In this document: one piece after another, positions 2,952 through 62,530 of the stretch
How the letters are laid out: the number at the start of each line of letters is the position of its first letter
How positions within the stretch are numbered: the first letter of the stretch is position 1
Assembly (NCBI GenBank): GCA_964234715.1
Contig: OZ174281.1
DNA from: Podarcis melisellensis
Taxonomy: Eukaryota
DNA: 64,000 bases
Reading direction: 5' to 3' (one strand)
Made by a program: the position numbers and the translations under genes
Notes under the pieces: model-generated
Database searches by the model: none
What the model saw: only the letters and a program-made list of their open reading frames with translations
What the model was told of the DNA's origin: nothing

Positions 2952-4612
2952 GTGAGTCCTTTGTTGTGTTCTGTTCTTTTCCCAATTTATAGCAGGTCCC
3001 TATTTTGAGCATCAGTTCCTTCTCAGATTGACAGGCCTCCTGTGAAAACTGCAGGACACTAGGCTTCATTCATAGCTGATTCATAAGCCAGGTGCGGTGC
3101 AGGTGCATACTGAGCTGTTTCCCTGTTATGCTTCACTTAAACATGTTGATCCTTCTTTGCTGGCTATAGAGAAATGTTGTTTTATTTCTCCTAGAGCAAA
3201 AGAGGCATATCTGCTCATGTTCCAAGGCTACTTCACGTTACGCCTAAAGAAAATGGTGTAGTCATGCTCATTGAAGTGTCCCCAGTCTTCATTACAGTAG
3301 GGTTTCCTGGTGTTTTCCTAGCAAGGTGTGTGTACCAGTGATGCACAGCGGTGCAAACAAGTTAACAATTTGGTTTAATAACTCTCTTCTCCTTAAACAT
3401 TCCTCACACGCCACCCCAATCAACTTTGATTAAGTGATTTCCGTTCGAATATCTAAATCACCAAAATTACAAATTTTCAACAATCTTCAGGCATTTAACA
3501 AATCTTGGATGACAAGCATTGAAGTGGAGTTTGTAGCAAAACGGCAGTTTTGTAAACTTACGCAGCAGGTTTGATTATTTAATTGAATTGGTGGTTTGCT
3601 TTCTGCCATCAGATAGGATGCACATGGTAGTATGTTTTTAAAAGTGGCATACTAGTTGGTGAAACAACAATTCCCTTTAGAATACCCTTTATTCTTTGGA
3701 AGAAGGTCCCTTTTAATCTGTTCTTCCTAAGCAATTTTAAAATTTAATAAATTTGCTAGAGCTCCTGTTACACTTGCAAGCTTTAATCAGTGTGATTGCG
3801 GAGGTCAGTTTTAATTGATGAGGTCAATTTTTAATTGCTAGGGCTGAGAGATGGCTACAGTTGTTTTATTTTTGAAGCTGATTTTCATTCTGGAAATTAA
3901 AAAGAAAATAGTGAAGATGGGTATTTTCTTCCAGGAATAAGAAATAGTGCTTTAAATTAACTGGCAAGTTGTAGTAAAAATAAATTGTAATTTGCAGCCT
4001 TTGACTTCAGTGGAATATAAGCAGCCTAATGATAAGTAGGATTCCAGCCTTTATGATACAACATTTCCTTTAGTAACTCCTTTAGCATATTGATATTTTG
4101 GTTGTATAAAACATTTATTAAAGCTAATCAATAAGATAATTTGTTAAAAGGCAATAGATGATAGTTGATGTGAAACACTTTAGTTGTGAAACTGACCTTG
4201 TGTGTCTGATTAAAACTGTATGCATGTGTATATTTAGCCACACTACAGATGATTTAATGTTAGAAGAATGAGTGAGTCTTGGGCTCACACTTTCTTCATC
4301 CTTCTCTAGCACAGCTATGAGAAGGAGCTTGGGAAGTGTTGCTTCTCTTTTACAGTATCTGTCACTTGATATGTAGTCTGAGACGAGATAAACTGAAGTT
4401 ATTCTTAATTACCGATTCTTGAAACAAGCAAACTTCAAACCATAGTTTGTGAAGCCGGTTTGTTTCTGCTAACAGTGATTAAGATTAACCTTAGTTTGTC
4501 CCAAGTTCTGCTATTAATTTCAGATGGAACTGGAAGCTTCTGATGTTCTGTAAGGGAGCATGTGAGCCCAAGACTTACTGAGCGTGTTCTATATCCAACC
4601 ACTGAGTTAATA

Positions 4613-5716: not shown

Positions 5717-6483
5717 CCGTATTTTTCGCCCTATAGGACGCACAGTCCCATAAGGCGCACCTAGGTTTTTTTGGGGGGGGGGAATTAAGGGGAAAAAATA
5801 TTTTCCCCCCAGGCCAGAGCTTCCCCCGACCCCAGCCCCCAGAACAGGCAACTCTCCGCAAGCCGCGGGAGCCCAACGCCGGGCTCCCGCGCCTTACGGA
5901 GAGCTGCGCCAAGCCTGGGTGCACTGAGCTCAGCACGCGCAGGCTTCAGCATGCAGGCAACTCTCCGCAAGCTGCGGGAGCCTGGCGCCGGGCTCCCGCG
6001 CCTTGCGGAGAGCTACCTGAAGCCCTGGCGTGACTGCTCAGTGCGCTGGGGCTTCGGGATAAGAGGCAGCTTTGCGCAAGCCAGGGGAGGGCTCCCGCGG
6101 CTTGCGCACAGCTACCCGAAGCTCCGGCACAACTGCTCAGCGCGCCGGGGCTTCGGGATAAGAGGCAGCTTTGCGCAAGCCAGGGGAGGGCTCCCGCGGC
6201 TTGCACACAGCTACCCGAAGCCCGGGCGAGACTGCTCAGAGCGCCTGGGCTTCAGGGTGCAGGCAGCTCTGCGCAAGCCGGGGGAGCCCGGGGGGAACTC
6301 CCGCGGGCTCCCAAGGCTTGCAGATAGCTTCCTGAAGCCTAGAGAGGGAGAGGGGTCAGTGCGCACCGACCCCTCTCGCTCTCCAGGCTTCAGCAAAAGC
6401 CTTCATTCGCCCCATAGGACGCACATACATTTCCCCTTCATTTTTGGAGGGGGGAAGTGTGTCCTATAGGGCGAAAAATACGG
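5717..6483 (+). mobile_element. Tc2/pogo-like non-autonomous DNA transposon, copy 1, with internal ~100-110-bp hairpin tandem array
   Basis: TA TSD; 27-bp TIR CCGTATTTTTCGCCCTATAGGACGCAC with 1 mismatch; 3' ~170 bp shared with copies 2 and 3. Confidence 0.9.
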
Positions 6484-10432: not shown

Positions 10433-13400
10433 AGGCTCTTGACATTCGCCTGCCTATGATCAGCTCAAGCAGTCTAATTTCCAGGGCTTGCAATAGCGAG
10501 CAATGGAGTTAACAATTGCGAGAGTTCAGACCTTGGAAGAATCTGCCCCCTCACCCCATGACAGCTTTATAAACGTAAATACCAGGTTAAAATATACACT
10601 CAATTACCACTTGGAATGTATTCATTATGATTTAATGTCATTTGATAGCTCTTGCTGTAATATGTTTATCCGTGAAACAAATTGGCCTGTTGCTCTTCTC
10701 AACACCTTCTTCCTGACACCCTGCAGTCGGTCAGGCCTAGAAATTGGCTGGGTCATTGGACGCCCTCACCCCACCACCTGCGACCTGACAGTCCTCATGA
10801 CTGGCAGCTGCATTTCACAGGACTAGAGTGTGTGGAATAAGTCAGCAGAGGTTATGGCTACTTAACTAAGCCTATGCTTCCTCTTACAGAATCATTTATC
10901 GCCACTGAATATTCATGCAACACCTTTATTATACCAAGGGATGTTACAGGAGTGTTCCCAAGTCTATAAAAAATTACATCGTGAAAGTAAAAGTACTGTA
11001 AGAATGAACACAATGAGCAAGGCCCTTTTATCAAATTTGTACAGTAAGAGTAGACCCATTAAAATTAATGGACCTAAGTTTGATAAAACCTTAGGTTTGG
11101 GGGAGGTTTTTTATTTGTGAAGCCTTTTCCTTCAGATCTCTTCAGTTCCCTTGTGGATGTCTAATTGAGACTGGGGGTTGTTGTTTTTTAATTGAATTAA
11201 AGCCTTTTAGTCCGCAATCAGTTTGACAGTATAGCTTATATACTTAAGCTATGATCTTCTACTTCTGTTTAAAAGTGCATATTTTTAATGCCAGCCAGAA
11301 GTGCTGCCACTGTCAGCAAATTCCATAGGAAACTAATACTGCAATTGGAGTCAGTCTTTCACTTCTGCTAGAGGTAAAAGAAAATCTGCTCGGTCAAATT
11401 ATTTGTAGTCAGACTACAATAGCTTTGTTTTGTTCTGCTAAACTCATGCAGAAAAAGAGAGAAATGAACTAAATATGTGGTATTAAAAATCCTTTGTACA
11501 TTTACCTGGTAGTAAGTCAGGTATTACTTATGAGTAACCACACAAAATTGCACTGCAAATCATGATCAAGCCATATGCTTGGCTTCCCATGTAAAGAATT
11601 TGTATCGTGTCACAAAATAAAGGGGATTCATTATTCTATCTGGCAATAGGTTGTTTTTTTTAATGGGGGTAGGCTCCCAGTTTTCCTAATTCTCCTAAAG
11701 TCATGGGTTGGATACCAGACTAAGTTAGTTGAGCTTAGGTCACATGAAATAAGTGAGACAGTGTATGCAAAGAATCTGTAACCTGCATATATCAACTAGG
11801 AGAAATGCGAAGTTAAAGTCTCCTATATAGATTCCTCCTGTTGCCCATCACTCCTCTCATAGTTTGCCTTTGGGTTATAGTTGGGATGGGAGTCAAGCAT
11901 CACCCCTTAAGGGACCAGATTTGGACCAGGAGGTTCCAGTTGCTAAGTTATTTAGAGGAAATTCTCCGACAATGACTCCTCCAAACAAACTATGGGCAGT
12001 AAGTCCAAGAACAAACCTTAGTTTCCACCCTGGGTTTTGGAGAGAAACAACCCACGAGGACTGGCTTCCACTTAACGCTAAGCAAAAGCTGTGGTTTGTT
12101 TCCTCCCAACTCAGGGCAGGGTGGAGCATAGTAGAAGCAATTCTTCAGTGTGCCATCGCACATTCCTAACCATGGTTTGTTTCTTACTGTGGCTTAACAT
12201 TACATGTGAACTGGGACGGGTATTTGGGTTTCACTTGGGGAATTCTTTAAATAAGTGTGCAAATGTTTTGAGATGGAATCAAGGAAGAGAAGGAGTATTT
12301 TGCACTGAAACGATGACTATTGCAAATCTCCTCACAATGATGTGTTCTTTTAAACCAAATAGATAAATCAAAGTGAGAAAAAATTCTCCCAAATGAATGT
12401 AATTTCAGACAAAGGCTGGAAAGTGAGAGTTTCCTTGGAGGGTGCTTTATGCCCAGAGGAAAAATTTAAGAACTAATAAATCGGATCAATTATGACTAAT
12501 CTTTTTTATTAAAAAAGTTGAGAAAACTTCTGCCCTGAGGTAGGGTTGCCACCTCTCTCCGATAGTAACCAGTTCTTGATGATAATTTCCTCCTTTATTT
12601 GTCTGGCAAAAAAACCCAAACCCCACAGCAAGCACTCCTTAAATCTAGACAGCTGTTTCTCTGTGCTTGTGAGCAGTCTTTGTAAACCCTGAATTACAGA
12701 CGCAAATTTGATGGCTGTTGAATAGCACTTTTGAAGGATGTTTTTTTTGTTAGACTACCCCAATAAATGGTTCACATGGGCAGTAAAAGAGGAAGGAAAT
12801 TGCTCATTTTATTTACAAGCATGCAGCTCTGACATTTAAGAGTGTCTTAGCTCTCCTCCCCTGATGGGCACTTGTAATAGCTTAATTGCCTTGTGTTCAT
12901 TTCGCATTTTATTTTTTATGGGGCAGTTCAACATTTTTGTGTAGTCAGTGGGCCTGAGCTAAGACTTTGATTGGGGGAAAATATTCGGTAGTGTCTGTTT
13001 TTGCTCTAGGAGAAGGAAGCAGAAAACTACTGAAAGTTTGACTCTGTAGTTTGAACTAATTAACTTAAAACTTTTGCTAACACATGAGCCTTCTCTTTAC
13101 CCCCACAAAGCGTGTTTTCCATCCCCCAACATGCACCATTAACAGGTTGGGGTCTGGGATCCAGCCAAGTGTTGAAAATCAGCGAAAACCTTTATTGCAG
13201 AAGTGCATTGTAACTGAAAGCACCTTAAGTCTTTCTGTTCTCAATGAATTGTGGAAAATATCTGTAATCATCAAAACAAAATAGTGGTCTTCATAGTCAG
13301 AGAGAAAATGAAGATGAATTTTAAGACAAATAGCTAGCTTCCATTTGTGCATGTTAAAGCACTGTGAGACTGCAAGTTTTAATGTTAAGCTCACGGTGTG

Positions 13401-27851: not shown

Positions 27852-27984
27852 NNNNNNNNNNNNNNNNNNNNNNNNNNNNNNNNNNNNNNNNNNNNNNNNN
27901 NNNNNNNNNNNNNNNNNNNNNNNNNNNNNNNNNNNNNNNNNNNNNNNNNNNNNNNNNNNNNNNNNNNNNNNNNNNNNNNNNNNN
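27852..27984. other. Assembly gap (133 N)
   Basis: Run of N in the sequence. Confidence 1.
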
Positions 27985-30401: not shown

Positions 30402-30649
30402 TCAATTTGTTTGCGAATCACTCTCATCACTAACATCAGAAGGGCCTTTCATTTCAGTATGTACAGCAACAAGGGCAGTGTCTACTTGCACATCTTCCTC
30501 ATCGGACTGAATCACAGGCGATTCTCCTTCACTGGCATCTTGGCTGGCAGAATCAGTCCAGGCTGAAGTTGAGGAGGACAACTCTCTCAACGCTGACTGG
30601 GTGGGAACTTGAAGACTGATTTCATTTTGACCAGTACTGTTGTCTGATC
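30402..30649 (-). CDS. DTNBP1: DTNBP1 last exon, coding part (acidic/PEST tail)
   Basis: ttttgaag|GA; GSDNSTGQNEISLQVPTQSALRELSSSTSAWTDSASQDASEGESPVIQSDEEDVQVDTAL...SDSQTN, then TGA. Confidence 0.95.
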
Positions 30650-31281: not shown

Positions 31282-31425
31282 CTATCATAGGAGATGACAT
31301 AGTACTGTCCTCTCCTCCTGAATTAAGGAAGACATCTAAGGCTTCTTGGTCAGACATATCCACAAGGTCCATTTGTTCCAACATGTCCACATTTACTTCC
31401 ATAGAAGACATGCTTCCAATCGGCT
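31282..31425 (-). CDS. DTNBP1: DTNBP1 exon 9 equivalent
   Basis: ggcag|AG; [48 protein letters not shown]; G|gtataa. Confidence 0.97.
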
Positions 31426-32410
31426 CTGCCATAAGAAAAAAGTAAACAAGTAAACTTGAAAATCTAACCCATATATGATCACTTTTGGAGAAAACTATGG
31501 CATGAATTAAGCATACTGGAATATAACATTTATGGTTAGTGAATAGGCATCCTTTTACCTTTATTTTTTAAAAAAAAAATACTTGCACTGGATTTACAGC
31601 TTTATTTTCTGAAATTCATGTAATGGAACTACTTCGGACTTCATACCCAAACTCAGGATGATGCAACTTACTTTTTAAAAAAGATTTTATCATTATGAGA
31701 CAGGTAAGTAAAACTAATCATAACTGCCATTACAAGAAGCTAACATCCCAATCTCAAACTGCTATTAAGAGGTGGCTTAATTTCTCCAGAATTAACCCGG
31801 AGACAAACAGAATGTGCTAAGTTGTGATAGAAGCCCCAGAAGTTTCAGGCATTGTAAAAGTCCTTTGTACATGTGTAGGAAATCCTACTGTGACAATGAA
31901 GGTGCTGGAACCAGGGCACTTGAACTGTGGAAGATCAACAGAATCCAGCTGGAAAAGTCTTAAACTATTAAACTTACTTCAGAACCTACAGCTTTCATAC
32001 ATCTATACAGTTGCTATACCACAGGCCTTCGGATTTGGCTGTGTTTTCTTCCATACAATTCATCATTGTGGAGGAAAACAGCAAAACTGCAATCTGTCAC
32101 TTGTTCATGTGGAGCAAGCAACTGCAATATTAGAATTTATCAGCTTTCATCCCACTGGTGCTATGCTATTTCCAGCTGCAGCGCCTCAATCGCAGTCCTG
32201 CATATAGGACAGTCCTTTGCCTGCTGTTACATTCTTAGAAGCTAAGTGGGTCTCATTCTGCTCACTGGTTGAAGAAGAGAATGCTCAAACAAGCAAGCCA
32301 ATATGAACTTATACATGAAAGAACAGGACAGAGATGTACTGAAGGAACTAAAATCCCGCTTCCTATTGGAATCTAGCTTAAAAATTACACAGAACCTTTT
32401 CAGTACTTGC

Positions 32411-32566
32411 CTCGTCTTTCAGTTATTTGCAGATAGCCTGTGGAGAGATACTGTTCCATGTCCTGCTGAAAAGCTTCTTCAAAGAACTTTTGCCGCTCCT
32501 TTAGCTTCATTTGCTGGGTATGCTCCATAGCCAACACCTTCTGTGCATGCTCTGCATCAAGCTCAG
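32411..32566 (-). CDS. DTNBP1: DTNBP1 exon 8 equivalent (GC donor)
   Basis: ctgcag|CT; [52 protein letters not shown]; GAG|gcaagt. Confidence 0.96.
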
Positions 32567-44588: not shown

Positions 44589-44790
44589 CCCATCAGATGT
44601 CAAGGAAATAAGCAACTATCTGACTTTTAGAAGACATCTGAAGGCAGCCCTGTTTAGGGAAGTTTTTAATGTTTGACCTTTTATTGTTTTTAATATCCTT
44701 TTGGAAGCCGCCCAGAGTGGCTGGGAACGCCTGACTAAATGGGTGGGGTATAAGTAATAAATTATTATTATTATTATTATTATTATTATT
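44589..44790 (+). mobile_element. L2-clade LINE 3' end with (ATT)n tail
   Basis: Homologous to 54952-55130 (ccatcagatgtc...gaaggcagccctgtttagggaa...gtggctggg), ending in about ten ATT repeats. Confidence 0.85.
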
Positions 44791-49773: not shown

Positions 49774-51963
49774 TAACATATGGTGTAACTCAATGCCAAA
49801 CCACAGCATATCATCACCAATATATTCACCACACACAGGGAGACCACAACTCAAGGTAACAGGGCATGCTACATACTGCTACATTTCTCTGGTCCCATGC
49901 CAGGTATATTATCTTTAGAATCCAGATACAAATATCCAACAGCAAACCTCACTCCAACAATGAGGGTGCCAGGATGGAGCACCCCATACAGGTAAGCAAG
50001 AGATCAGGGGCAACCATGACACAATGCAGAATTGTTCCAAATGCTTCCCTTGTCTCCCATCCCTACATCAGCCATACATGAACACTGTGTCTTCCCTGAA
50101 CCGCATTGTTGTTAACAGTAAAATGTACTTTCAGCAGAAAGTAATACTTTCCACATTAAGGTGAAGCACTCATCCCAACACTGCAGGTAAGCTATTAGCA
50201 AAGGCCAAGCACTCAAATTCAACTACTGCTATTGAACCCCATTATCCCTAATGCATTGCAAGAGCACACTCAGACTTCCACTGCAACCCCCAAGGATGAA
50301 AAAGGGGTGTGTACTCACTGCAGGAGGAACACATGAGCACTTGGGTGGTACCACTCTCCCTTGTCTCTTTCTGCCTTTCTACCTATTCTGCATCCAGATT
50401 CAGCTATAATCCAGCTGCTGCCTACTACTCATTACTCTTGGTCTCCTCAGGCTGACTGTTCCGCAGCTACCACTGTAAGCTCCATGGCAGACAGTTTTGC
50501 AACAAGTGAAGATACTCCTAACATGAAGCAGGTATGGGTGGTGCAAAGAACAGGACAAGCACCCTGTTGGAGTGGCATCTTGCCAATCCCAAATGTTTGG
50601 CTTTTCCTTGCAGGATTTACTGAGTTCTACCCCACCCCAGATGCTGATCAATCAGGGCTATAACTGCCACATGTGTTGTTTCCTTATTCCCAGAGACTGA
50701 TAAGGATTGCTTTTCCACACTCTAGCGTGATCTGGCTTCAGCTGACCTCAGGATGGAAATCACAGAGGCTGAGAGTTTGAAGGGTTTAGGAGTGGCCCTT
50801 CACACCTGTTCAGTCAAGGATCCTTTACCATGAGGTTAGAATGCCTCTTAGGATGTACAGCAGGGAATGAAAATAAAAGCAGACAGTGAGCCCTGCACAG
50901 TGCTATCCAGTAGAACCAAGCTATCAGGCAAAATAGCAGGGTATGTAATGGATTGATCACATAGGTTGCCAGGAGTGAGGCAAACGAAAAGGACTGTTGG
51001 CCCATACACAGGCTGAGTTATTGGTACCATGCAGCACTCCTCTGATTAGCTCAGGTGTGCCTGGTATGGAGTAATACTCAGATTGAAACTTGGGTCCCTT
51101 GCATGTAAAATGTGAGCTGTTTCACCCAGCTAGGATTCCTTCTGCATTCCTGGCATCTATGCAGGTGTTGAGGTTGGCAGAAGAGAAGACAAATGGCTCA
51201 TTATGTGCTTGATTGTTGTCAGCTGTTATAGTATATGGTTTCAGGCACTGCTCCATGGTGTTTGCAGCATGACTTCAAGTCCTGAAATCACATTCTCTTT
51301 TGCCTGACATGACTTTAACCAGGCTACATTTGCCCTTTTTTCTGGTGGACCTGAAACTGCCATGTCCTGCTTCCCAGTCCAATATTGTATACAGTGAGCC
51401 TCTGGAGGTTGATGCTGTCAATGCCTTTTGCTGCATGTGCTGACCCCTGGGCTGTGGGGCAAGAGTCTTTGTGTCACCAGATGATATTGAACCTTTATTC
51501 CAGTAGGGCTGCATGTACTCTCTGCCCATATAGCTATGATGGTAACATACTGTGCAAGCTTTCCTTCTTCCATTGAGACTGTATGTTGTGCTCATACAAT
51601 AGTAGGTGTACGACACAAAGGGATTTGAACCCCTGGTCTGTAGGTATGCCTACAGACTGGCAGGGTCATTGCATGCTGTGCCTGGAGCTGATGGAGATGC
51701 AATTGGGGTTGTGCTCCTCTCATGCATTAATTGTCAATGTCTGTACAGGTCAGGAGAGGCCAGCTCACAACAGAATGACTATGTGAAGCTCTACCTTGGG
51801 CCTCCAAAACAAACCCTAGACAGGGGAAGCATGTGGGCATTGTCACTGGAACAGTTTCCCCATGGTAGTGTGATGGGGGCAGTAATCTAACAACATCTGG
51901 GAACTCAGTACTGGAAAAGGCTCTTTTAGACTTCAGAGGCGCTTCAGTGTTTGCTTAACTAAA

Positions 51964-51990
<27 letters not shown>
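51964..51990. repeat. (AC)n microsatellite
   Basis: About 13 AC units. Confidence 0.95.
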
Positions 51991-51994
<4 letters not shown>

Positions 51995-53116
51995 TGCTAA
52001 CATGTAACACAGGACAAAACAAAGCAACGAAAAGACACCGCAAGAAGAGTGAAGACTATAAAGAATAACACACAAAATTCTGAGTGCCAACTTGCAGAAA
52101 TGTGAGTTTATGCCTTTTTTTAAAAAAGCAAGAACTGTAAAATGGAATTCTCACTTTGGATAATAATTTCTGCCATTTTTGAATTAGTACATCATTTATT
52201 TATTTTTAATAGTGGAAATAGAGTAAAGTAATAACATTTTTTTGATAACACTAATCTGGAAACATTGCCCAACTGCATGAAAACATATTCTACACTAGAA
52301 TTTATACCAAGCATATATCTTATAGCAAGCATATAGTTTAATCATGCATAGACTATGTATTTGAAACATTAAAAAATCAAAACTGCATCTTTCATATGAA
52401 ATTTTAGTCAAAACTTTAAAAAAACTAAAAGTGATTTTGATTGTTTCATTCTTCACATATGTGGGGAAATGCTCTTTTAAAAACATGGCTTTGCAATGAC
52501 TGCTTTAAAAGCAAAAAGGAACACATCAGAAACCAACCTCTCATTTAAACATTACTAGCAGAAAAAAAGGTTCTGGATTGGTATACCACTCTTATATCAC
52601 TCTTTTTCTCCAATCTACCAAATATGAAACAACCTGCTTCATGTTAAAGCATGCTTGTACTAAAGGATGCCAGCAGTCAACATTACAGAAATGATTCAAC
52701 AGAAATGGATTCCTGACTACTGTTCCCTAATATCATATTTAATTTTAATGATTTCTTTTTTAAAGAAAGAAGTGTGTACTAGGCAAATTTTATCCAATGC
52801 CTGGCAATGTACATTTCTATGAACTCTTACATAATTACAGACCTAGATCATCATCAGCTTAGATTCACGCCTGCAAAATTTCATTTTATAATCAAGGCAA
52901 AGGAATAACAATGCCTGCTATAAATATGCAGGGATATTTTTTTTCATTTACTCTTCTCAGCTACATAAATAAGATCTCTAGCTATTCCACTATCAGAATA
53001 CACAGTACAAGTCAAGCAAAACAAAAGCTCAAAAAATAGCTTACAAATTACTTTAACTGGCATTTTAATACAATAAGAGCTTTAAAGATGAAAACCATTA
53101 ATAAACTTTCACCTAC

Positions 53117-53159
53117 AAGAATTCTTCCGATTATTCTCAGTGGTTCCTGGAGAAGACAT
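53117..53159 (-). CDS. DTNBP1: Candidate alternative first coding exon of DTNBP1 (short isoform N-terminus MSSPGTTENNRKNS)
   Basis: GCC-ATG Kozak context, 43 nt to CTT|gtaggt donor, phase 1 compatible with exon 8. No expression evidence is available from sequence alone. Confidence 0.6.
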
Positions 53160-54679
53160 GGCAGAGAGAAACAGGCAAGTAAACAGAAGCACAGTGCTGA
53201 TCAAGTGAAACCTCCAATTACTAAGCAGCTCTAGTGATGTACATCTTTCCCGTCGTAAAAGAATGATACTACACATCCATTCCCCCACTCGAGAACTACA
53301 CAGGACAGACCACATCAATTGGTCATTCACATAAAACTGAAACAAACAAGGACAAATTCTTCCACTGTTGCTCCATAAACTGAACATAAGCTGTCAGGAG
53401 ATGTGGTATTCCAGAATGCATGCCTATATCTGGGAGCTACCACATGCCGTTTGAAAAAGGGGTGGTAAGTGGTCATAAGGAATACACTAACAGCTAATAC
53501 TTGATTGTCTAACAAAATGCAATACATTATTCAATTAAGCCACTGATGAACAGATTTCAGTTTAAATAGGAACAGTTTATTTGGCTCTCCCCTCCCAAAA
53601 TTACCAATTATGATTGTGCTTAATAACCCTTCAGAACAGATTATGTACTAGTCTTGCTAGAAATGCATTTTCCCCCTTTTGCATGTGTGTGGTGTGCACA
53701 CACACGTGCATATACAGAGAGAGAGTCTGAACTTGAAATCACTGTGCTAATGTGCGATACACACATCACACAAATTATTCAATCACAGCTTATGATGATT
53801 TGCTCTGTTAAGCCAAATACTCATTAACATTCCTGTGCCTGATAATCTCAACAATGTGAGTTTTCACAATTTAGAAATCCTTTCTCAAGCAAAAAACAAA
53901 AAACTTGATTTAAATGCAAGCATACAGTTAAACCTGTTTGTGCACAGTGGGAGAAAAAAGGGGGGGCAAAGTGTTCTCTCCCAGATTTTAACTGCTCTTT
54001 TTATACCTCATCCAGTTGTACATTCTGAGCTACCCAGTATTATACATGCAACATTGTAATTGTGGGAGCATCATACGTTTACACAGGAGCATTATGTTCC
54101 CTCTTTTTGCACTATTTTAAGGCTGCAATTTGAAGCTAGTTTCATTAACAGAAACATCACCTGCATACCCTCACTCGTCATTATCTGCTCAACAGGCAAC
54201 AGTAAGGAATACACTGCGTATCTCAGTAAAGACATACGGAATAATTCAACATCATGCTATGCCAATCGTTCTGTCAGGGCATGCATTTCTACTTGCCATA
54301 TGGAATAGCACTCCCCCCACCACCACCACCACAGTTCTAGGAGTTCTCCAAACTTCCCACCCCAAAACAATTTCAAGGGGCAAAGAGGGCAAGGGGGAAG
54401 CTCCATTGTGCAAGACACAAAGTTCTTGTTCAAGCTTCTACTGATGTGTCTCACTTGCTGAATCCCTGCCATACAGTATATAACTTGCAAAGTTCAGAAA
54501 AAGGCTAACATTAAAATTGTCATTAAAATTATCCAAGATATCCCTACCTCCCACCACCAACCTAGAAAAAAAACCATTAGAAGTACAGTTGAAGGCTCAT
54601 ATCACTAGAAATGGAGGATATAAAACAGAACTAATCAATTCATACATATCTCAAGGCAATTATATCGGATCTTATAGCC

Positions 54680-55135
54680 ACCGAGACCATATAACACTGG
54701 TCCTGAAAGACCTACATTGGCTCCCAGTATGTTTCAGAGCACAATTCAAAGCGCTGACGCGAACCTTTAAAGCACTAAACGGCCTCAACCCAGTATACCT
54801 GAAGGAGTGTCTCTACCCCCATCGTTCAGCGCACACAGTGAGGTCCAGCACTGAGGGCCTTCTGGCGGTTCCCTCTCTGCGAGAAGTGAGGTTACAGGGA
54901 ACCAGGCAGAGGACCTTCTCAGTAGTGGCACCTGCCCCGTGGAACGCCCTCCCATCAGATGTCAGAGAAATAAACAACTATCCGACTTTTAGAAGACACC
55001 TGAAGGCAGCCCTGTTTAGGGAAACTTTTAATGTTTGAAGTTTTATTCTGTTTTTAATGCTCTGTTTAAATCCGTCCAGTGTGGCTGGGGAAACCCAGCC
55101 CGATATGCAGGGTAGAAATAATAAATTATTATCAC
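54680..55135 (+). mobile_element. L2-clade LINE, 5'-truncated, with ORF2 C-terminus still open
   Basis: RDHITLVLKDLHWLPVCFRAQFK...RTFSVVAPAPWNALP...FRRHLKAALF matches the L2-type 'HITPVL..LHWLP...RAFS...WN.LP' signature; 3'UTR and AAT/ATT tail follow. Confidence 0.9.
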
Positions 55136-56365
55136 CACCATTATCATCATCATCAAGTGTTTCCTCTTACCACAAGCTTTTACTGAGAGTTTTAATTAAC
55201 ATTTTAGTTTATTAATCAGCAGGTGGCAATTTTAATCAGTAAAACACAGGGATTGTGGTTTATTTTGCTCCAACCAGGATCAATAAGCTAAGATCCTTGG
55301 TTCAGATGTAGCACTAAGTCAGGGATAATAATTTGTTCCCTTCCAGCATGAGTAGAATAAAGAGAAGCATGTACAATTCACTAACGTACAGTAAGCCAAT
55401 GATTTATGGCTTACAGTGACATGCAAATGTAGCCAATATATTTGCAGCATGGTTAACAACCTTAATCTAGTCTATTGATGTTTATCCCTGTGCAGTATCA
55501 GTAACACAAACAAATACAGCATCATGTACTTTCCTTGCCAGTATTGTACTTTCTATGGGGGGGGGATGAGTGGCAGCCATGTTGCAAATAAAACCTTTAA
55601 TTATATCCAAGTATTCATAGAAAATGGTTAGGACTTCTCAGATACATCTACTCCCTCACAGACAATTCTGGATCACATCACTATTTAAGACATGTTTCAA
55701 GACCAGTTCTCATCTCCACATGAAACTGTTAGAAAGTATTGAAAACTTTATTACATTTTTTTTCAAAAGATCTGAAGGGGGGGGAGGCAGATTTCAGCTG
55801 GCATTGCCTATTCTACTAAAAATATCTGTAGCTGAAACTCATATTGCAATTTAGAACAAAGAAATAATCAAGTATGCCTTACAGCTGAAATGGAAGTGTC
55901 CACTTGAATACATACATTTGGAAATCACTGACATTTTATGGCAGTCAAAATTAGTTTTTCAATAATTACAATAGTTGCTTCACGGGAGAAATAAAATTAA
56001 CTATTATATGAAACTGGGAAGTCAGAAATATATATTTACTATTCATCATCATTGTAGTTTACAACAGAGCTTCCCAAATACACACAGTTGTACAACTTTA
56101 TTAATATTAACTTTAATTGCTAACCCTTTCTATATCAAATGATCTAAGAGCAAGTTATAATCCATAAAATAACATAAACTACAAAAATCAATAGTCGTAA
56201 ATATAAATTAAATATAAATTAATCCTTGGAATATCGAAAGCAACCAGTTCCTCCAATTTCTATATTGAGTTTTAACATATGCCAGTGACACCATTCTCCT
56301 CTTGTCAGGGACTGGTACATTCAGACAGCAACCAGGACATCCCAGAAGACATGCAAGGCACTGAG

Positions 56366-56615
56366 CAGTCGTACCTCGGAAGCCGGATGGAATCCATTCC
56401 AGAAGTTCATTCGACTTCCAGAATGTACGGAAACCAAGGCGCAGCTTACAATTGGCTGCAGGAACCTCCTGCAGTCAACCAGAAGCTGCGGAACACACAT
56501 TGGATGTTCGGGTTCCAAAGAACGTTTGCAAACCGGAACACTCACTTCCGGGTTTCTGGTGTTCAGGAGCCAAAACGTTCGAGTCACAAGGCGTTCGACT
56601 TCTGAAGTATGACTG
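56366..56615. mobile_element. Tigger-like MITE (diverged)
   Basis: CAGTCGTACCTCGGAAG ... CTTCTGAAGTATGACTG followed by TA; left TSD is mutated. Confidence 0.75.
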
Positions 56616-56689
56616 TACTCTGTACTGATTTTTGTTGCTGACAATTAAATTTTATGCAAACAGCTCAAACAGAGCTGCAGCTAATGGCC

Positions 56690-57000
56690 CCCAAATACTT
56701 GAGTGAATAGCCAGGTCTTAACTTGGTGCCAAAATGAAACCAATCGCAGTGCCAATCAGGCCTCCAAGCGGGCGGGGGAATTCCACAACTGGGGTGTCAT
56801 AACAAATAGGCCATCTCCCACAACTCCACATAATGCCCAGCTTTTAGAGGTGGGATGCAGAAAAAGACCTCATTCCCAATAGACCTCTCTAGGCCGAAGG
56901 GTATAAAGAGAGCACACTCCAGGAAGCATCAAGTTCCGAAGTTCTTTAGAACTTTGATGCCATCACTAACACCTTGAAATCAAACGGAAAACATACCAGG
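56690..57000 (-). mobile_element. Old L2-like LINE fragment
   Basis: Reverse strand resembles the L2 ORF2 end (ttcaaggtgttagtgatg..., cagttgtggaattcccc = LWNS). Confidence 0.45.
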
Positions 57001-57019
57001 TCCTAGGACAAATAATTAA

Positions 57020-58042
57020 ACAGTCAGCCTAGGGGCACTTAGAAAAGGATGCTGTAATTACTAACAGCGAGAATGGCTTTACCAAAAAAAAGTCATTCCA
57101 GACTAATCTTATTTCTTTTTTGTTTGGATGGAGTTACTTGCTTGATGGATTAGGAGAATGCTGTGGCGGTAAAGCATATTGATTTCAAGTAAGGCTTTCA
57201 ACAAAGTCCCCCAAGATATTCTTTTGTAGGAGCTGGTAAAATGTGGGCTAGACAATGTGTACTGCTAGGTGGATTTGTAGCTGGTAGACTGACTGAATAC
57301 AAGACTGCTCACCAATGATTCTCCGTCATTCTGCAGAAAAAGGGGACAAGTGGGGTGCTGCAGGGTTCTGACCTGTGCCCAGTGGTTGTTACAACATCTT
57401 TATCAATGGCTCAAATAAATAGAGGAAATCTGCAGATGGCACCAAGCTGTGAGGGGTTGTTGAGAGAATCTTTATTGCAGTCCAAAGACCCATAGAGTGA
57501 TTTCAGAACAAAATACAGTTAAGATAGCCAGCCACACAAGAGAAACTGAGGCGGTCATTTTGTTTTGTCTTAAGCATGATAATCTTTGTTTCTTATAACT
57601 TCTGAAAGAAACTTTGCCACAGCCAGTGTAATATCATTAGACCTGTCATCCAAAAGATTTAATATGGAAGGCTTCCGATTTTCCTGGGAGATTTGCTAGT
57701 AGGGGTTTAATCAGTTGGTCCCTTGCTCGCTTGTACTGCCCACAATGCAGTAAGATATGCTTCATACAATCGACATCCTGAGAACATAAAGCCTATTCTG
57801 ATAAGGGATGCTTCTCAGTCTACCATTTAGCACTTCCGATAGAAATACATTTAGTCTAGCTTTGGTAAATAAACGCCGATAGGTTGGTACAGACAGGTTC
57901 CTAAGATAATGAGGATATCTGAAAGGCGTACCCATATTGGATTCCTAAGGGGTAGCTAATGCCTCAGAAATAGAATCAGGATTCAATGTGAGCTTAACAA
58001 ATTAAAGAACTGGACTCAAGCTATCAAAATGAATTTCAATAC
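57020..58042 (+). mobile_element. Degraded CR1 RT fragment split by a nested insertion
   Basis: Motifs resembling GFTKKKS.QTNLISF, KAFNKVP, SGVLQGS.L.P, ADGTKL.G, resuming after 57948 with GVAN...RIRIQ..LNKLKNW...KMNFN. Confidence 0.78.
57460..57947 (-). mobile_element. RTE-X-like LINE 3' fragment nested antisense in CR1
   Basis: Minus-strand translation PHYLRNLSVPTYRRLFTKARLNVFLSEVLNGRLRSIPYQNRL...DCMKHILLHCGQYKRARDQLIKPLL (C-terminal zinc-knuckle region); flanked by AGGGGT(T/A)G duplication. Confidence 0.65.
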
Positions 58043-59292
58043 TTAGTCCTGGGATCCTCCAGCACTAACTCCAAGACTACCTTGGTCAGGAGTGAATTCT
58101 AGGCAGCAGGATGGATGGTGCTGCAACAGTATCCCTATTATCTCTTTATAGTTCAACGTGAGGTACAGACACACGTAACCCTTAGCAGAATGGATGTGTC
58201 TCCTCACAAGAAAGATAGACTCGCTGTGGATTCCTGTGACACACACCCTGACTAACCCTCCAATCTGTTTTGAGGCTGAATTGGGTACCCAGGTAGAAAG
58301 AGCTGAGCTGGATCAATTCCATCCAGCCTGTCCATCCAGTTCTGAATAATACATGTCAGGTCAGCCCCCAATGGACAGACCTGACATTTAGCTGCAGCAC
58401 TAGATCAGAGGGCAGGTTGAATGTATAAACACGCTAAATTCTATGCAACAGAAGACAGCTATGATATATGCCACTGACTTTCAAAACTCAAACCTAGAAG
58501 ATTATTTTTTAAACATAGTTTATATTGTTCACTCTATAATGCAAATATTAATAATAGCGCAGAATTATATTTACCTACTCTTTGGCCATCTACTAATGGA
58601 GCCTGAGTTTAAAGCTGTCATGACAAACAAGACATTTTCAATACCAAGCTAAAACAATGTGGCATTTTATATAACGTGCCACTTGTTATCTGTTGAAGTT
58701 AATTGACTGTGTTATGCAATAATAAAATCACCCACTTAGCTAAGCAAAATCACACATTTAGCAATTGCTAACAATTTTTAAAATGGCAGGTTAATATTTT
58801 GTGCCTCACACATTTTTGTCTCAACAAGTTGTGCATCATAAGTGCCCACAACAGCAGGAAACACACTGCCACACTATGGACTAGCAGTCACCCACCATAG
58901 GCATAATGCCCACATGCAACATATGCTTAACAGCATTCAACACCTCAGGCCAGTTGGGAGGATGAAAAGTCTGTACACACCTCCTATATCCCTTTCCAGC
59001 CTCCCCTTTTCACTCAGTCAAGGAGTTCAAACTTCAGGCTCACTGTTTATTAACTTTACTACCAGCATATCAGCACAACAGAGCATTACTTATTTACTTC
59101 AACAAGAAACATATATAGCCAGGAAGACAGAGTAAGACGCTTGTTTGCATTATGGTAGCTAAAGCTGATCTGCAGAACTGGTCTGCCAGAAGTTAAGCAG
59201 TGCAATACAGAAACAAAAGTGAAATAGATATCTTTTGTTACATTTGATTTTGTAAAAGTTGTCCTAAGGGGTAGGGGGAGGATTTGAATTAC

Positions 59293-59315
59293 CTTTGAAG
59301 ATCTCAAGTTCTTTC
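59293..59315 (-). CDS. DTNBP1: DTNBP1 23-nt micro-exon (exon 7 equivalent)
   Basis: ccttccccccttttacag|GAAAGAACTTGAGATCTTCAAAG|gtaatt encodes (R)KELEIFK(A); the phase-1 end matches exon 8. Confidence 0.92.
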
Positions 59316-59427
59316 CTGTAAAAGGGGGGAAGGAAACAAAACAAAATGCATGATCACAAGTTTAGCTGCACAAAACTTTTTGTCAGCAACAGGAAAAGAA
59401 TATAAGGTTGTGTGATTTTTATAAGTA

Positions 59428-59648
59428 CAGTGGTACCTTGGGATGCGAACAGAATCTGTTCCGGAGCCCCGTTCGCATCCTGAAGCGAACGTAACCCGTG
59501 TCCACACATCACGTTTTGGAGCTTCTGCGCATGACATAATTTTCGTGCAGCAAAACCCGGAAGTAAAACGCTCCGTTAATTCCAGGTCGCCACGGAGCAC
59601 AACCTGAAAATGCCTAACCCGAAGCGTATTCATCCCAAGGTATGACTG
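59428..59648. mobile_element. Tigger-like MITE
   Basis: TA TSD; CAGTGGTACCTTGGGATG ... CATCCCAAGGTATGACTG. Confidence 0.85.
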
Positions 59649-61114
59649 TATGTTAAGTATGTAAGACTGCTTCTCATAATCAGGGTATGTAAAACAGCAT
59701 TATTACACACAATAAATTCATCTCAAGTCAATCAACAGTTGATATATTTTATTCCCACTGACTGCAAAAACAGCTTTGAATGAACAGTATAACCAATTAA
59801 TCTGTGCAAGTAATTTGAAATAGTTTAAGTATGTTTATCAAGTTCTAAAAAGTGCTTTCAATTATTGGCATTATCAATTCGGAGACAACGGAAGTCATAT
59901 ATCCAATCATATTAATAAAATAAGTATAAAGACTACTCTAAATGAACTTCAGAGTTGAAGGATTTAGTGTAATTCTACATCTTAGCATTTATTACTCGTA
60001 GAAAATTGTATGCATGATAAAACTGTAACAGAAATTGCTTGGGGGAAAGATGAAGTTCTATAATATAAAGAACGGTAAAATACACAGTATCTTGGAGCCA
60101 AATGTACCTGGATGGCTACATTCAGAGAGATGGAGAAGCAATAGTCTATAAGGGTGCTGATTTCTACAAACATCTACCAAAGAAATCATTCTTCTCAAAC
60201 CAAGATCAATATTAGCAATGCTTAATCAAGGGCACAGTGCTCATTTCTACATAATAAGGTAAACCTTTTCCAGTGCACCCTTTCTGATTAACTGTAAATA
60301 ATTCCAGCCTGCTTCAAGTCAATATATAACATACAACATTCTTTGATAATTCTTTGGTAATCTGGGGAGCACCCATTCTTTCAAGAGAAATCTCAAAGGA
60401 CTTACTGGCAATTAGATTATATAAAAAAAAAGGCTGTGTCTTTCAACAAGCTGGAATTCCTATATTTAGTGCAACACTGAAAACTAGCATATATTGACTC
60501 TGGAGCAATGTCAAATCATGAATGTTGCCAATAGGCACAGCTGGCATTAGCAAATGTCATCTTCAGGGGAATGGTAGTTTTTTAAGCAAGGAAAAAAGGT
60601 TCAAATCAGAAATGAATATTGAATTGAATTTAGCTATGTTGTATATTTAAATTCTTTTGTTTCACATTACAGTTAATATAACAGGACAGAGGAACAGTGA
60701 CAGGTGGTTTGGATTTAGGGGGACTCAGGTTCTAAACCCTGATTATTCACAAAGGAAATGCATTAAGTATCTCTCAACCTAATCATAGTATTGTGGTGAA
60801 GGTTGGATGAAAGTCCAATATAAATCACTCTTAGGTGGGGAATTAGGTCCCTTGAACTCATGTGTGGCTTCAAGGACACTTACTTTCTCCTTGCCTTGAG
60901 CACTTCTGCTAAGGATAGCTTCTCTCCTTTGGGTAACTCACATGGATAATGAACACCAGATAAAGATTATATACTCCTGCTCAGTCACCCTAAACTGGTG
61001 CTGCTACCTTTCAATTTCTTTAAATAACATACATTCTCCTGAGCAGAGGGTGGGCTCTCCTCATGCCCACAGCCTGCTGATTAACAAGGACAAATTTTAA
61101 TCAGTTATGCCACC

Positions 61115-61226
61115 TCAAATTTATTATGGCATAACTTTTTGTACACCACTTCATCATGTGCATGGAATAGCACAAAATTCTCTTTGGTTTTTGCTGCAAC
61201 AGACTAACATGCATACCGCTCTGGAA
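61115..61226. mobile_element. Penelope-like terminal repeat remnant
   Basis: atttattatggcataac...cacttcatc.tgtgcatg and ttttgctgcaacagactaacatg...ctctggaa resemble reptile Penelope pLTR ends (from memory; degraded). Confidence 0.45.
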
Positions 61227-61794
61227 GTGGTGAAACTACAGTTTCCCTGCAATGTTCAAACCTGAAAACTGTGATTTAAGCACACCGTACCAACTAGGAT
61301 TGATCATGGTTCGTATGCCGTACTTGGCAGACTTTGGACTGTAGGGAATGCTTATATCAGTTTCCTAGTGTAGACTTTATAGGGAAACTGTGGTTTAACA
61401 AACCATAAGGTTTTCTTGCAGATGATGCATAAGGAGGTGGTAGCCTGTGAATTTATCCCTGCTAAAAGGGGAAACTAGAGTTTGTTGAGTTGAGAATGTT
61501 ACACCTGAACTGGGTAGGTGAGTCACCTTAGAAAAAAGCCTCATTTGTCTGGTATCTGAATAGGTGCTGCAATGTGGGATAGAAAGCAACTACATATTCC
61601 TCTGTTATAATACAAGCATCTCAAGAAACATTCTAAAAGGGAAGATTTGTGTATACTATATTCTTTCTTGAATGGCAGTTGTTAATAACATTCTGACAAT
61701 AATGTATCCTATTAATTGAGTTCTCTCTCTCAAATTATTAGAACAGAAATTGGTTGGTAAGTCTTTGAGAATAAAAGGCCTTCCTTGTTCTGTA

Positions 61795-62035
61795 CAGTAG
61801 TACCTCGGTTTAAGAACAGCCCTGTTTATGAACTATTTGGTTTACAAACTCCGCAAAACCGGAAGTAGTATCCCAGTTTGCGAACTTTACCTTGGTCTAA
61901 GAACGGAATCCAAACAGTGGAAGGGCACTGGTGGTGGGAGGCCTCATTAGGGAAAGCGCGCCTCGGTTTAAGAACGGTTTCGGTTTAAGAACGGGCTTCC
62001 GGAATGGATTAAGTTTGTAAACCAAGTTACCACTG
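61795..62035. mobile_element. Tigger-like MITE
   Basis: TA TSD; CAGTAGTACCTCGGTTTA ... TAAACCAAGTTACCACTG; internal repeats of CGGTTTAAGAAC. Confidence 0.85.
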
Positions 62036-62039
62036 TATA

Positions 62040-62530
62040 AGTAATTTTTCACTCTGTTATCCTCCAATTTTGTTCATCTGGTTGCATCTTTAGATTTTTT
62101 CCTCCAAAAGAGTTCACCATCTTACTTGGTGTAAATTTAATGCATAATTCCAGCTCTTTTCTTCAAGGGTATAAGCCCTACGATGCAAATCACCTCACTA
62201 ATATGTCTCCAGAGTATGTCAAAATATGTCCTTTAGAAATCAAATAGCTTGGCTGCAATTCTAAATCCAACTGGCCTGCTAATTAAATCAAACCAGACTA
62301 AGTCATGATCACTTGATCCAAGTTTATTCCTAACACCATTTATCTTATCCTCACTATATGTCAGCAGCAAACCAGACACTACCTTTTCTCCCAAGAGGTG
62401 AGTGACAACTTGATGAACCGATTTATCATTTAGCTCACCCAGAAATAGCTGGTTCCTGCCATTGCTAGAAGCATTTATTTTTTCATCTGTACCAAAGAAA
62501 TGGAGTCCACAATTACTATGCAATGCCCTT
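62040..62530 (-). mobile_element. Degraded CR1 ORF2 (endonuclease C-terminal region) fragment
   Basis: ORF 62233-62523 contains 'LLLTYSEDKINGV...LGSSDHDLVWF...FDF', typical of the CR1 APE end. Confidence 0.65.

What the first reader, a model, noticed from the sequence alone, without database searches (positions are those of the whole stretch)
53117..53400. Candidate hidden alternative first exon in DTNBP1 intron 7 giving a short, coiled-coil-less dysbindin
Seen: on - there is a good Kozak (ctctctGCC ATG, ATG at 53159-53157), then 14 codons MSSPGTTENNRKNS plus 1 nt, and a donor CTT|GTAGGT at 53117/53116. Phase 1 is exactly what exon 8 (32566) needs, giving [30 protein letters not shown]. Total CDS is 43+156+144+248 = 591 nt, or 196 aa plus stop. 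The flank lacks recognisable repeats and carries FOX-type motifs (GTAAACA at 53179-53185, AAACAAACA near 53340). Knowledge: the N-terminal coiled coil of dysbindin mediates BLOC-1 and dystrobrevin binding, and the paralogues DBNDD1/2 consist of the dysbindin domain only. From memory (unverified), DBNDD2 and fish short dysbindins begin with a similar 'MSS/MSG-P-G...R' leader, and short internal-start DTNBP1 transcripts may already be annotated in mammals. Inference: an internal promoter yields a DBNDD-like, BLOC-1-independent isoform, possibly reflecting the ancestral unit from which the DBNDD genes arose.
Basis: partly seen in the sequence, partly recalled or inferred. Interest (0 to 1): 0.8.

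Follow-up and report, generated by a model that had tools for sequence, protein, structure and literature searches.

The report
Conserved first exon for short dysbindin
The predicted extra start exon inside the lizard dysbindin gene is real and is shared by fish, birds and mammals. It gives a short dysbindin built like the sister protein DBNDD2. Gene-finding pipelines already list this form in other species, but I found no paper that studies it.

Summary
The letters are exactly as described: ATG at 53159(-), 14 codons plus 1 nt, GT at 53116, in phase with exon 8 at 32566.

By sequence alone this is chance level. The same strand holds 50 equal or better ATG/open-frame/phase-1-donor combinations. 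Comparison with other species settles it:
- A spliced bird cDNA contig joins the homologous exon to exon 8 at the predicted junction.
- Mouse, finch, tarpon and shad loci each carry a 43-nt coding part and a T|GTAGGTG donor (C|GTAGGTG in the finch).
- This region is the only non-repeat block conserved between lizard and mouse intron 7. It includes an upstream block (a likely promoter) and a conserved 7-8-codon upstream ORF.
- Turtle DBNDD2 starts with a homologous 43-nt, phase-1 exon, so the unit predates the DTNBP1/DBNDD2 split.

Support from the lizard's own RNA is only indirect: one contig ends exactly at 53117, and no junction reads were obtained.

The exon is real, is new for squamates, and is known from automatic annotation elsewhere. 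Independence from BLOC-1 is untested. In mouse, the sandy deletion covers this exon.

The parts
53371..53465 (-). Upstream conserved block, a putative core or proximal promoter of the internal transcription unit
   Evidence: Lizard-mouse local alignment scores z=19 against shuffles, while control intron segments score z about 0. The block is also present in the finch genome. The bird cDNA contig starts just downstream of it, at the homologue of about 53364. The promoter role is inferred.
53160..53364 (-). 5' untranslated part of the alternative first exon. This is a minimum extent, set by homology to the 5' end of the bird cDNA. Lizard contigs reach further upstream, to 53442, 53571 and 53618.
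   Evidence: It is colinear with the 203-nt 5'UTR of bird cDNA L001. Block 53247-53184 is conserved with mouse at z=14. Contigs from runs X1, X3 and X6 cover it.
53221..53244 (-). Conserved upstream ORF (aagATG, MYITRAA, stop), 85 nt before the main ATG
   Evidence: An upstream ATG in the same aagATG context, with an 8-codon ORF, occurs in bird L001 (MHIGEAAC), mouse (MHVRGAAW) and finch, all ending at an aligned TAA (the lizard ORF stops one codon earlier, at TAG). Translational control is inferred.
53117..53159 (-). Coding part of the alternative first exon: ATG plus 13 codons plus 1 nt (MSSPGTTENNRKNS, then the first base of Ser15), ending in phase 1
   Evidence: Letters read. The same 43-nt length, phase and leader occur in mouse, bird, tarpon, shad and finch, with synonymous third-position changes. 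Contig X1 ends exactly at 53117.
53090..53116 (-). Donor GTAGGTG and the conserved first ~27 nt of the downstream intron
   Evidence: GTAGGTG is identical in lizard, mouse, finch, tarpon and shad. GTAGGTG..A.TTTAT is shared by lizard, finch and mouse.
32411..32566 (-). Exon 8 (156 nt), acceptor for the leader exon. It starts the Pfam Dysbindin domain and has a GC donor at 32410-32409.
   Evidence: Pfam PF04440 matches profile positions 1-48 at E=4.8e-22.
31282..31425 (-). Exon 9 (144 nt)
   Evidence: tblastn with Podarcis dysbindin. Splice sites and frame checked.
30402..30649 (-). Exon 10 coding part (248 nt including the stop)
59293..59315 (-). Mini-exon 7 (23 nt, KELEIFK) of the long isoform. 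It ends in phase 1 and is bypassed by the short isoform.

Best explanation
The stretch is the lizard orthologue of an ancient alternative first exon of DTNBP1 that lies in intron 7.

Transcription starts at an internal promoter. The conserved block at 53465-53371 sits just upstream of where a bird cDNA begins. The RNA then runs through a 5'UTR of about 200 nt or more that holds a conserved 7-8-codon upstream ORF. Translation starts at the ATG at 53159. After 43 coding nt the exon is spliced from the conserved T|GTAGGTG donor (53117|53116) to exon 8 (32566).

The product is a 196-aa protein: a 15-residue Ser-rich leader (MSSPGTTENNRKNSS) followed by the whole Pfam Dysbindin domain and the acidic C-terminal tail. 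It lacks exons 1-7, which encode the N-terminal region and most of the coiled coil.

This is the same architecture as DBNDD2, whose first coding exon is homologous. The unit of internal promoter, leader exon and dysbindin-domain exons therefore existed before DTNBP1 and DBNDD2 diverged.

**Shown:** the conservation of the exon, its splicing in a bird, its annotation in other species, and its homology to the DBNDD2 leader.

**Inferred:** use in this lizard, the promoter and upstream-ORF roles, and any function that does not need the coiled coil, such as a DBNDD2/CK1BP-like role.
For: - Leader-bearing short dysbindins are annotated in Phyllostomus, Rousettus, Molossus and Rhinolophus bats, in Macaca, Ovis and Mus (isoform X1, 196 aa), in the finch Chloebia, and in Megalops, Clupea, Denticeps, Sardina, Alosa, Sinocyclocheilus, Oncorhynchus and Silurus.
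- Bird cDNA contig L001 (1441 nt) is spliced through exons 8-10. Its junction …AATTCAT|CTGAGCTGG is homologous to 53117|32566, and its 5'UTR is colinear with the window.
- The genomic exons in mouse, finch, tarpon and shad all have 43 nt of CDS, phase 1 and a GTAGGTG donor. MSSPG is kept through synonymous third-position changes.
- The exon lies 6,134 nt into intron 7 in the lizard and 6,261 nt in the mouse.
- It is the only non-microsatellite colinear match between lizard and mouse intron 7. Three conserved blocks score z=14-19, against z about 0 for controls.
- The upstream ORF is conserved in lizard, two birds and mouse.
- Contigs of three runs from three studies cover 53166-53331, and one ends exactly at 53117.
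- Turtle DBNDD2 has a homologous leader exon of 43 nt in phase 1. The DBNDD2 clade is separate, with 100/99 support.
Against: - No junction read, loose end or transcription-start signal was obtained in this lizard lineage.
- The three contig runs are only guessed to be RNA. They were chosen because they hold the stretch, and they also carry sporadic intron pieces at similar depth.
- The one raw RNA run laid no reads at all, so it was no test.
- No lacertid spliced protein fragment was found.
- The donor is weak by consensus score (4.7 bits).
- The lizard has two in-frame upstream ATGs (53315, 53276), absent from bird and mouse, which could change the N-terminus.
- The protein itself has not been demonstrated in any species in what I could read.
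Confidence: 0.85

Rival explanations
1. The exon is genuine in other vertebrates but is silent or decaying in this lizard. The sequence would then be conserved only by descent or for another reason.
For: There are no junction reads. No squamate protein with this leader is in the collections. Lineage-specific in-frame upstream ATGs are present.
Against: The ATG, frame, 43-nt length, donor, upstream ORF and upstream block are all intact after more than 300 million years of separation from mammals. Contigs of three runs cover the exon, and one ends exactly at the donor base.
Confidence: 0.08
2. The conserved block is mainly a non-coding regulatory element, such as an intronic enhancer or a promoter of a non-coding or nonsense-decay transcript. 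On this reading the short open frame is carried along and makes no stable protein.
For: The 5'UTR and upstream blocks are at least as conserved as the coding part. Half or more of the differing leader codons are non-synonymous between distant species. A conserved upstream ORF could keep translation low.
Against: The ATG, exact 43-nt length, phase and MSSPG/…S residues are kept from teleosts to mammals through synonymous changes. The paralogue DBNDD2 uses the homologous exon as its ordinary first coding exon. The spliced product keeps the full Dysbindin-domain frame.
Confidence: 0.05
3. It is a chance ATG/open-frame/GT combination in an intron.
For: There are 50 equal or better combinations on the same strand, and this one has the weakest donor of them.
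Against: None of the comparative evidence is expected by chance.
Confidence: 0.01

Closest known systems
Mouse 'dysbindin isoform X1' (RefSeq model, 196 aa, P0161) and the equivalent short DTNBP1 models of bats, sheep, macaque, finch and teleosts
   Same: Same gene and same place (about 6.2 kb into intron 7 in the mouse). Same 43-nt coding first exon, GTAGGTG donor, phase 1, 15-residue MSSPG leader and 196-aa length.
   Different: The window is a lizard. No squamate model with this leader turned up in the two protein searches that could have shown one. Squamate short models (Sphaerodactylus, Phrynosoma, Gekko, Varanus) carry unrelated N-termini instead. The lizard has extra in-frame upstream ATGs.
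DBNDD2 (dysbindin domain-containing protein 2, also CK1BP or dysbindin-2), for example Mauremys reevesii isoform X1 (P0150)
   Same: It starts with a homologous 15-residue leader (MSGPGAHSQSRRLPS), encoded by a 43-nt, phase-1 first coding exon spliced to the exon-8 homologue. The protein is a leader plus the Dysbindin domain, with no coiled coil.
   Different: It is a separate locus and a separate clade with 100/99 support. In DBNDD2 this is the gene's ordinary start, not an alternative internal start. Its donor is GTAAGT, not GTAGGT.
Dysbindin-1C (the N-terminally shortened form recognised in the literature, 270-271 aa)
   Same: It is an N-terminally shorter product of DTNBP1.
   Different: 1C starts at an internal Met (MLSAHWEKK…, as in P0240 and P0400). 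It keeps the coiled-coil exons 5-7 and has no unique leader. The present form starts at exon 8 and lacks them.
Internal-promoter short isoforms such as dystrophin Dp71 (by analogy only)
   Same: A promoter in an intron, with a unique short first exon spliced in frame to the downstream exons, gives a C-terminal-domain-only protein (PMC7372313 abstract, listed).
   Different: The gene is unrelated. For DTNBP1 the promoter activity is inferred, not measured.

Membership tests
DTNBP1 short (MSSPG-leader) isoform, as annotated in mouse, bats, sheep and teleosts | The leader exon lies inside intron 7 of DTNBP1, between mini-exon 7 and exon 8 | tested here: met
   Exon 7 is at 59315-59293, the leader at 53159-53117 and exon 8 at 32566. 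In mouse the leader lies 6,261 nt into intron 7.
DTNBP1 short (MSSPG-leader) isoform, as annotated in mouse, bats, sheep and teleosts | 43-nt coding part starting with ATG and ending in phase 1 at a GTAGGTG donor | tested here: met
DTNBP1 short (MSSPG-leader) isoform, as annotated in mouse, bats, sheep and teleosts | Leader peptide of the form M-S-[ST]-P-G-x-x-[ED]-[NS]-x-x-[KR]-x-x-S | tested here: met
   MSSPGTTENNRKNS-S compared with MSSPGLQENSQRTPS (mouse), MSSPGAPENTPKNSS (bird) and MSSPGSTDSSKRSSS (tarpon).
DTNBP1 short (MSSPG-leader) isoform, as annotated in mouse, bats, sheep and teleosts | Spliced in RNA to exon 8 | tested here: inconclusive
   Shown in bird cDNA L001. In the lizard lineage there is only a contig ending exactly at 53117 and no joint. 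The raw RNA run laid no reads.
DTNBP1 short (MSSPG-leader) isoform, as annotated in mouse, bats, sheep and teleosts | Own transcription start (a first exon, not a cassette exon) | tested here: inconclusive
   The bird cDNA 5'UTR is colinear with the genome for 203 nt, holds no exon-7 sequence, and its contig begins with an adapter. No CAGE or 5'RACE data were available.
Pfam Dysbindin domain (PF04440) proteins | Match to the family profile above the gathering score | tested here: met
   Exon 8 alone scores 79.2 bits against a cut-off of 25 and matches profile positions 1-48 of 145.
DBNDD2 (orthologue membership) | Falls in the DBNDD2 clade, at a locus without the dysbindin N-terminal exons | tested here: not met
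   The window carries DTNBP1 exons 6 and 7 and is 95-98% identical to Podarcis dysbindin. The DBNDD2 clade is separate. The window form works like DBNDD2 in architecture but is not DBNDD2.
Dysbindin-1C | Starts at the internal Met of exon 5 and keeps the coiled-coil exons | tested here: not met
   The leader isoform begins at exon 8.

The most novel reading that the evidence does not exclude
DTNBP1 is two nested genes: the long BLOC-1 subunit, and an ancient DBNDD-type unit with its own promoter, conserved upstream ORF and leader exon. On this reading DBNDD2, and perhaps DBNDD1, are genome-duplication copies that kept only the inner unit. The short dysbindin would then do a DBNDD2/CK1BP-like job that needs no coiled coil and no BLOC-1. 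That job would be lost in sandy mice, whose deletion covers the exon, but spared in alleles that hit only the upstream exons.
Probability: 0.35. Interest if true: 0.7.

Novelty: new member of a known kind. Interest (0 to 1): 0.5.

Why it matters
The dysbindin literature I could read counts only isoforms 1A, 1B and 1C. It also questions whether DBNDD1 and DBNDD2 are true dysbindin relatives or merely share a domain (PMC3155195, PMC9510119).

A fourth isoform appears here, with its own conserved promoter-like block and upstream ORF. It is kept from teleosts to mammals, and its unique exon is homologous to the first coding exon of DBNDD2. This shows that DBNDD2 corresponds end to end to this short form, and it gives a concrete, testable product without the coiled coil.

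The exon also affects how mouse models are read. It lies 6.26 kb into mouse intron 7. That is inside the sandy deletion, which runs to nt 12,377 of intron 7 (PMC3022736). Sandy mice should therefore lack both forms, while mutations confined to the upstream exons should spare the short one.

For genome annotation, squamate gene models seem to miss this exon and substitute unrelated starts.

Tried and rejected
- **Sequence statistics alone.** The arrangement is at chance level, so it cannot carry the claim.
- **FOX motifs as a promoter clue.** TGTTTAC is kept in one bird cDNA but is TTTTTAC in finch and CGTTTGC in mouse, and it is absent in fish. The second motif is not conserved. Rejected as evidence.
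- **Competing donor 4 nt downstream.** This is simply the conserved +5/+6 GT of GTAGGTG. The bird cDNA uses the first GT, as do all models listed except Fukomys X2, which reads through the donor.
- **Raw RNA run X23.** No reads laid anywhere on the stretch, so it was no test.
- **Look-ups of the short mouse and bat proteins' loci.** These failed because only the longest product per gene is indexed. I solved this for mouse through the full-length protein.
- **Exon-8 fragment search.** It found only intron-retained ORFs for the lacertid lineage.
- **PDB.** No solved relative of the exon-8 segment.
- **Rfam.** Nothing near threshold in 52500-54000.
- **Literature.** Searches for an internal promoter or a short dysbindin isoform found nothing specific.
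- The spliced model was never joined or searched as one sequence. Exons were handled singly by reference.
- **Logan protein P0157.** It carries the primate-type leader and may be human, so its contigs were not fetched.

Full report
**Observation.** On the minus strand the window reads ctctctgcc ATG at 53159-53157, then 13 more codons (MSSPGTTENNRKNS) and one extra T at 53117, followed by GTAGGTGAAAG. Exon 8 begins at 32566 after ctgcag. With the carried-over T it reads Ser, then [15 protein letters not shown]. Exons 8 (32566-32411), 9 (31425-31282) and the coding part of 10 (30649-30402) have the stated sizes and phases, so 43+156+144+248 = 591 nt, or 196 aa. tblastn with a Podarcis dysbindin (95-98% identical, so the window is a lacertid-like lizard) and a motif search place exon 6 at about 63015-62881 and the 23-nt exon 7 at 59315-59293. 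The candidate therefore lies in intron 7, 6,134 nt from its start.

**Is it more than chance?** Not by itself. The same strand between 32567 and 64000 holds 50 ATG/open-frame/phase-1-GT combinations with a donor score at least as good, 26 of them with a purine at -3, and the candidate's donor (4.7 bits) is the weakest. The frame is also open upstream as a 92-aa ORF.

**Comparative protein evidence.** I searched exon 8 alone against 1.84 billion representative proteins. Most short hits were intron read-through ORFs. Two began with a leader like the candidate's: Phyllostomus discolor "dystrobrevin binding protein 1" (MSSPGLSENSQRNAS|ELDAEH) and Silurus meridionalis "dystrobrevin binding protein 1b" (MSSPRSSSSKRNSS|ELD). 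A word search with the bat protein then found the same 15-residue leader in these models:
- three more bats, Macaca fascicularis and Ovis aries;
- Megalops, Clupea, Denticeps, Sardina, Alosa, Sinocyclocheilus and Oncorhynchus;
- the finch Chloebia gouldiae;
- an unnamed cluster of 21 bird sequences (P0160).

No squamate protein with this leader appeared. Gecko, Phrynosoma and Varanus short models carry unrelated N-termini.

**DNA evidence.**
- P0160 is encoded on a 1441-nt Logan contig (L001). It is 96% identical to bird dysbindins and is spliced through exons 8-10. An Illumina adapter sits at its 5' end, followed by a 203-nt 5'UTR that is colinear with the window. Its junction …AAGAATTCAT|CTGAGCTGG is exactly homologous to 53117|32566.
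- In the tarpon, shad, mouse and finch genomes the exon has the same 43 coding nt and phase 1. The donor is T|GTAGGTG, or C|GTAGGTG in the finch. MSSPG is preserved through synonymous third-position changes.
- In the mouse the ATG lies 6,261 nt into intron 7, close to the lizard's 6,134.
- A blastn of lizard intron 7 against mouse intron 7 gives, apart from microsatellites, a single colinear match: this exon.

**Non-coding conservation.** Local alignments against shuffled controls show three conserved blocks between lizard and mouse. Neighbouring intron segments used as controls score z about 0.
- An upstream block at 53465-53371 (z=19). The finch genome shares it, and the bird cDNA begins just downstream of it, which fits a promoter.
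- A 5'UTR block at 53247-53184 (z=14).
- The coding part plus the donor and the first ~27 nt of the intron (z=16).

An upstream ATG in the context aagATG, 79-85 nt before the main ATG, opens a 7-8-codon ORF in lizard, both birds and mouse. The FOX-like TGTTTAC is not kept in finch, mouse or fish, so I give it no weight.

**Expression in the lizard lineage.** Fourteen small runs, guessed to be RNA, hold 22-45% of the words of 52900-53600. I laid three of them, from three studies.
- All three cover 53166-53331. One contig spans 53117-53428 and so ends exactly on the predicted last exon base, as expected if the assembly graph branches at a splice site. Others reach 53442, 53571 and 53618.
- The runs were selected for holding this stretch, and they also contain scattered intron pieces at similar depth. 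No joint or loose end was reported.
- The one raw RNA-seq run laid no reads at all, so it is no test.
- An exon-8 fragment search found no spliced lacertid fragment.

Use of the exon in this species is therefore likely but not shown.

**Relation to DBNDD2.** Weaker exon-8 hits start with MSSKG…NKRLLS, MSSTG…NKRLAS or MSGPGAHSQSRRLPS. The last is RefSeq "dysbindin domain-containing protein 2 isoform X1" of the turtle Mauremys. Its locus shows a first coding exon of 43 nt ending in phase 1 (CCCT|GTAAGT), 9.4 kb above the exon-8 homologue. In a domain tree the turtle DBNDD2 and the fish leader-bearing "dysbindin-like" proteins form a separate clade with 100/99 support. The leader exon is therefore older than the DTNBP1/DBNDD2 split, and DBNDD2 matches the short DTNBP1 form from end to end. 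Which lineage lost or gained the upstream exons was not tested.

**Mechanism.**
- Shown: a conserved alternative exon with a start codon and donor, spliced to exon 8 in a bird and modelled in many species.
- Inferred: an internal promoter drives a transcript whose product is the 15-residue leader plus the entire Pfam Dysbindin domain, and the upstream ORF tunes translation. Exon 8 matches profile positions 1-48 of the domain. The product also keeps the acidic tail and lacks exons 1-7, and with them most of the coiled coil.
- Hypothesis only: independence from BLOC-1 and dystrobrevin, or a CK1-binding role like that reported for DBNDD2/CK1BP (PMC8616157).

**Known or new.** The isoform is present in automatic annotation (RefSeq, Ensembl/UniProt, Bat1K), so the kind is known. 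The reviews I could read list only dysbindin-1A, 1B and 1C and doubt the kinship of DBNDD1 and DBNDD2 (PMC3155195, PMC9510119). Searches for an internal promoter or a short isoform found nothing specific. Two spatial long-read studies report neuron-type-specific Dtnbp1 isoform switching in mouse brain (bioRxiv 10.1101/2025.05.02.651907; PMC13545012). Whether their Dtnbp1-206 is this transcript is unverified. The sandy deletion runs from nt 3,701 of intron 5 to nt 12,377 of intron 7 (PMC3022736). It therefore covers the mouse leader exon and its upstream block, by inference from coordinates.

**Caveats.** P0157, an unnamed protein with the primate-type leader, may be human, so its contigs were not fetched. 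The N run at 27852-27984 was left alone.

Noticed in passing
window 32409-32410 (-), exon 8 donor: Exon 8 ends with a GC donor (GAG|GCAAGT), not GT. Bird proteins that read through it (…ERRGKL, …ERRGKF) show the same GC donor. Intron-retained ORFs around exon 8 are common in public contigs: P0279 is on 46 contigs and P0280 on 33.
   Followed up: partly
window 53221-53244 (-); L001 144-170; L005 55983-56009: A conserved 7-8-codon upstream ORF (aagATG…TAA/TAG) lies 79-85 nt before the leader ATG in lizard, two birds and mouse. Tarpon also has an 8-codon upstream ORF about 105 nt upstream.
   Followed up: partly
window 53276 and 53315 (-): Two lizard-specific upstream ATGs are in frame with the leader ATG, with no stop between. 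Both have weak context. If used, they would add 39 or 52 residues to the N-terminus.
   Followed up: no
L005 (mouse Dtnbp1) 49802-62178: The published sandy deletion end (nt 12,377 of intron 7) lies beyond the mouse leader exon (nt 6,261-6,303) and its upstream conserved block. Sandy mice should therefore lack the short isoform too.
   Followed up: partly
proteins P0165, P0170, P0178, P0223 (Sphaerodactylus, Phrynosoma, Gekko, Varanus): These squamate dysbindin models of about 200 aa start at exon 8 with unrelated N-termini. They are probably mispredicted first exons standing in for the MSSPG leader.
   Followed up: no
window 44753-44790 and 51964-51997 (-): Microsatellite-like repeats in intron 7 give the only other blastn matches to mouse intron 7. 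They reflect simple sequence, not orthology.
   Followed up: no
protein P0167 (Fukomys damarensis isoform X2): This model reads through the leader donor (…ENSERNPCVGGQ…). It reflects either an annotation artefact or retention of the downstream intron.
   Followed up: no
window 53272 and 53284: All three laid runs of 'organism A' differ from the window at these two places (C>G and C>T on the + strand). The runs therefore come from a slightly different strain or a close species, not from the assembled individual.
   Followed up: no
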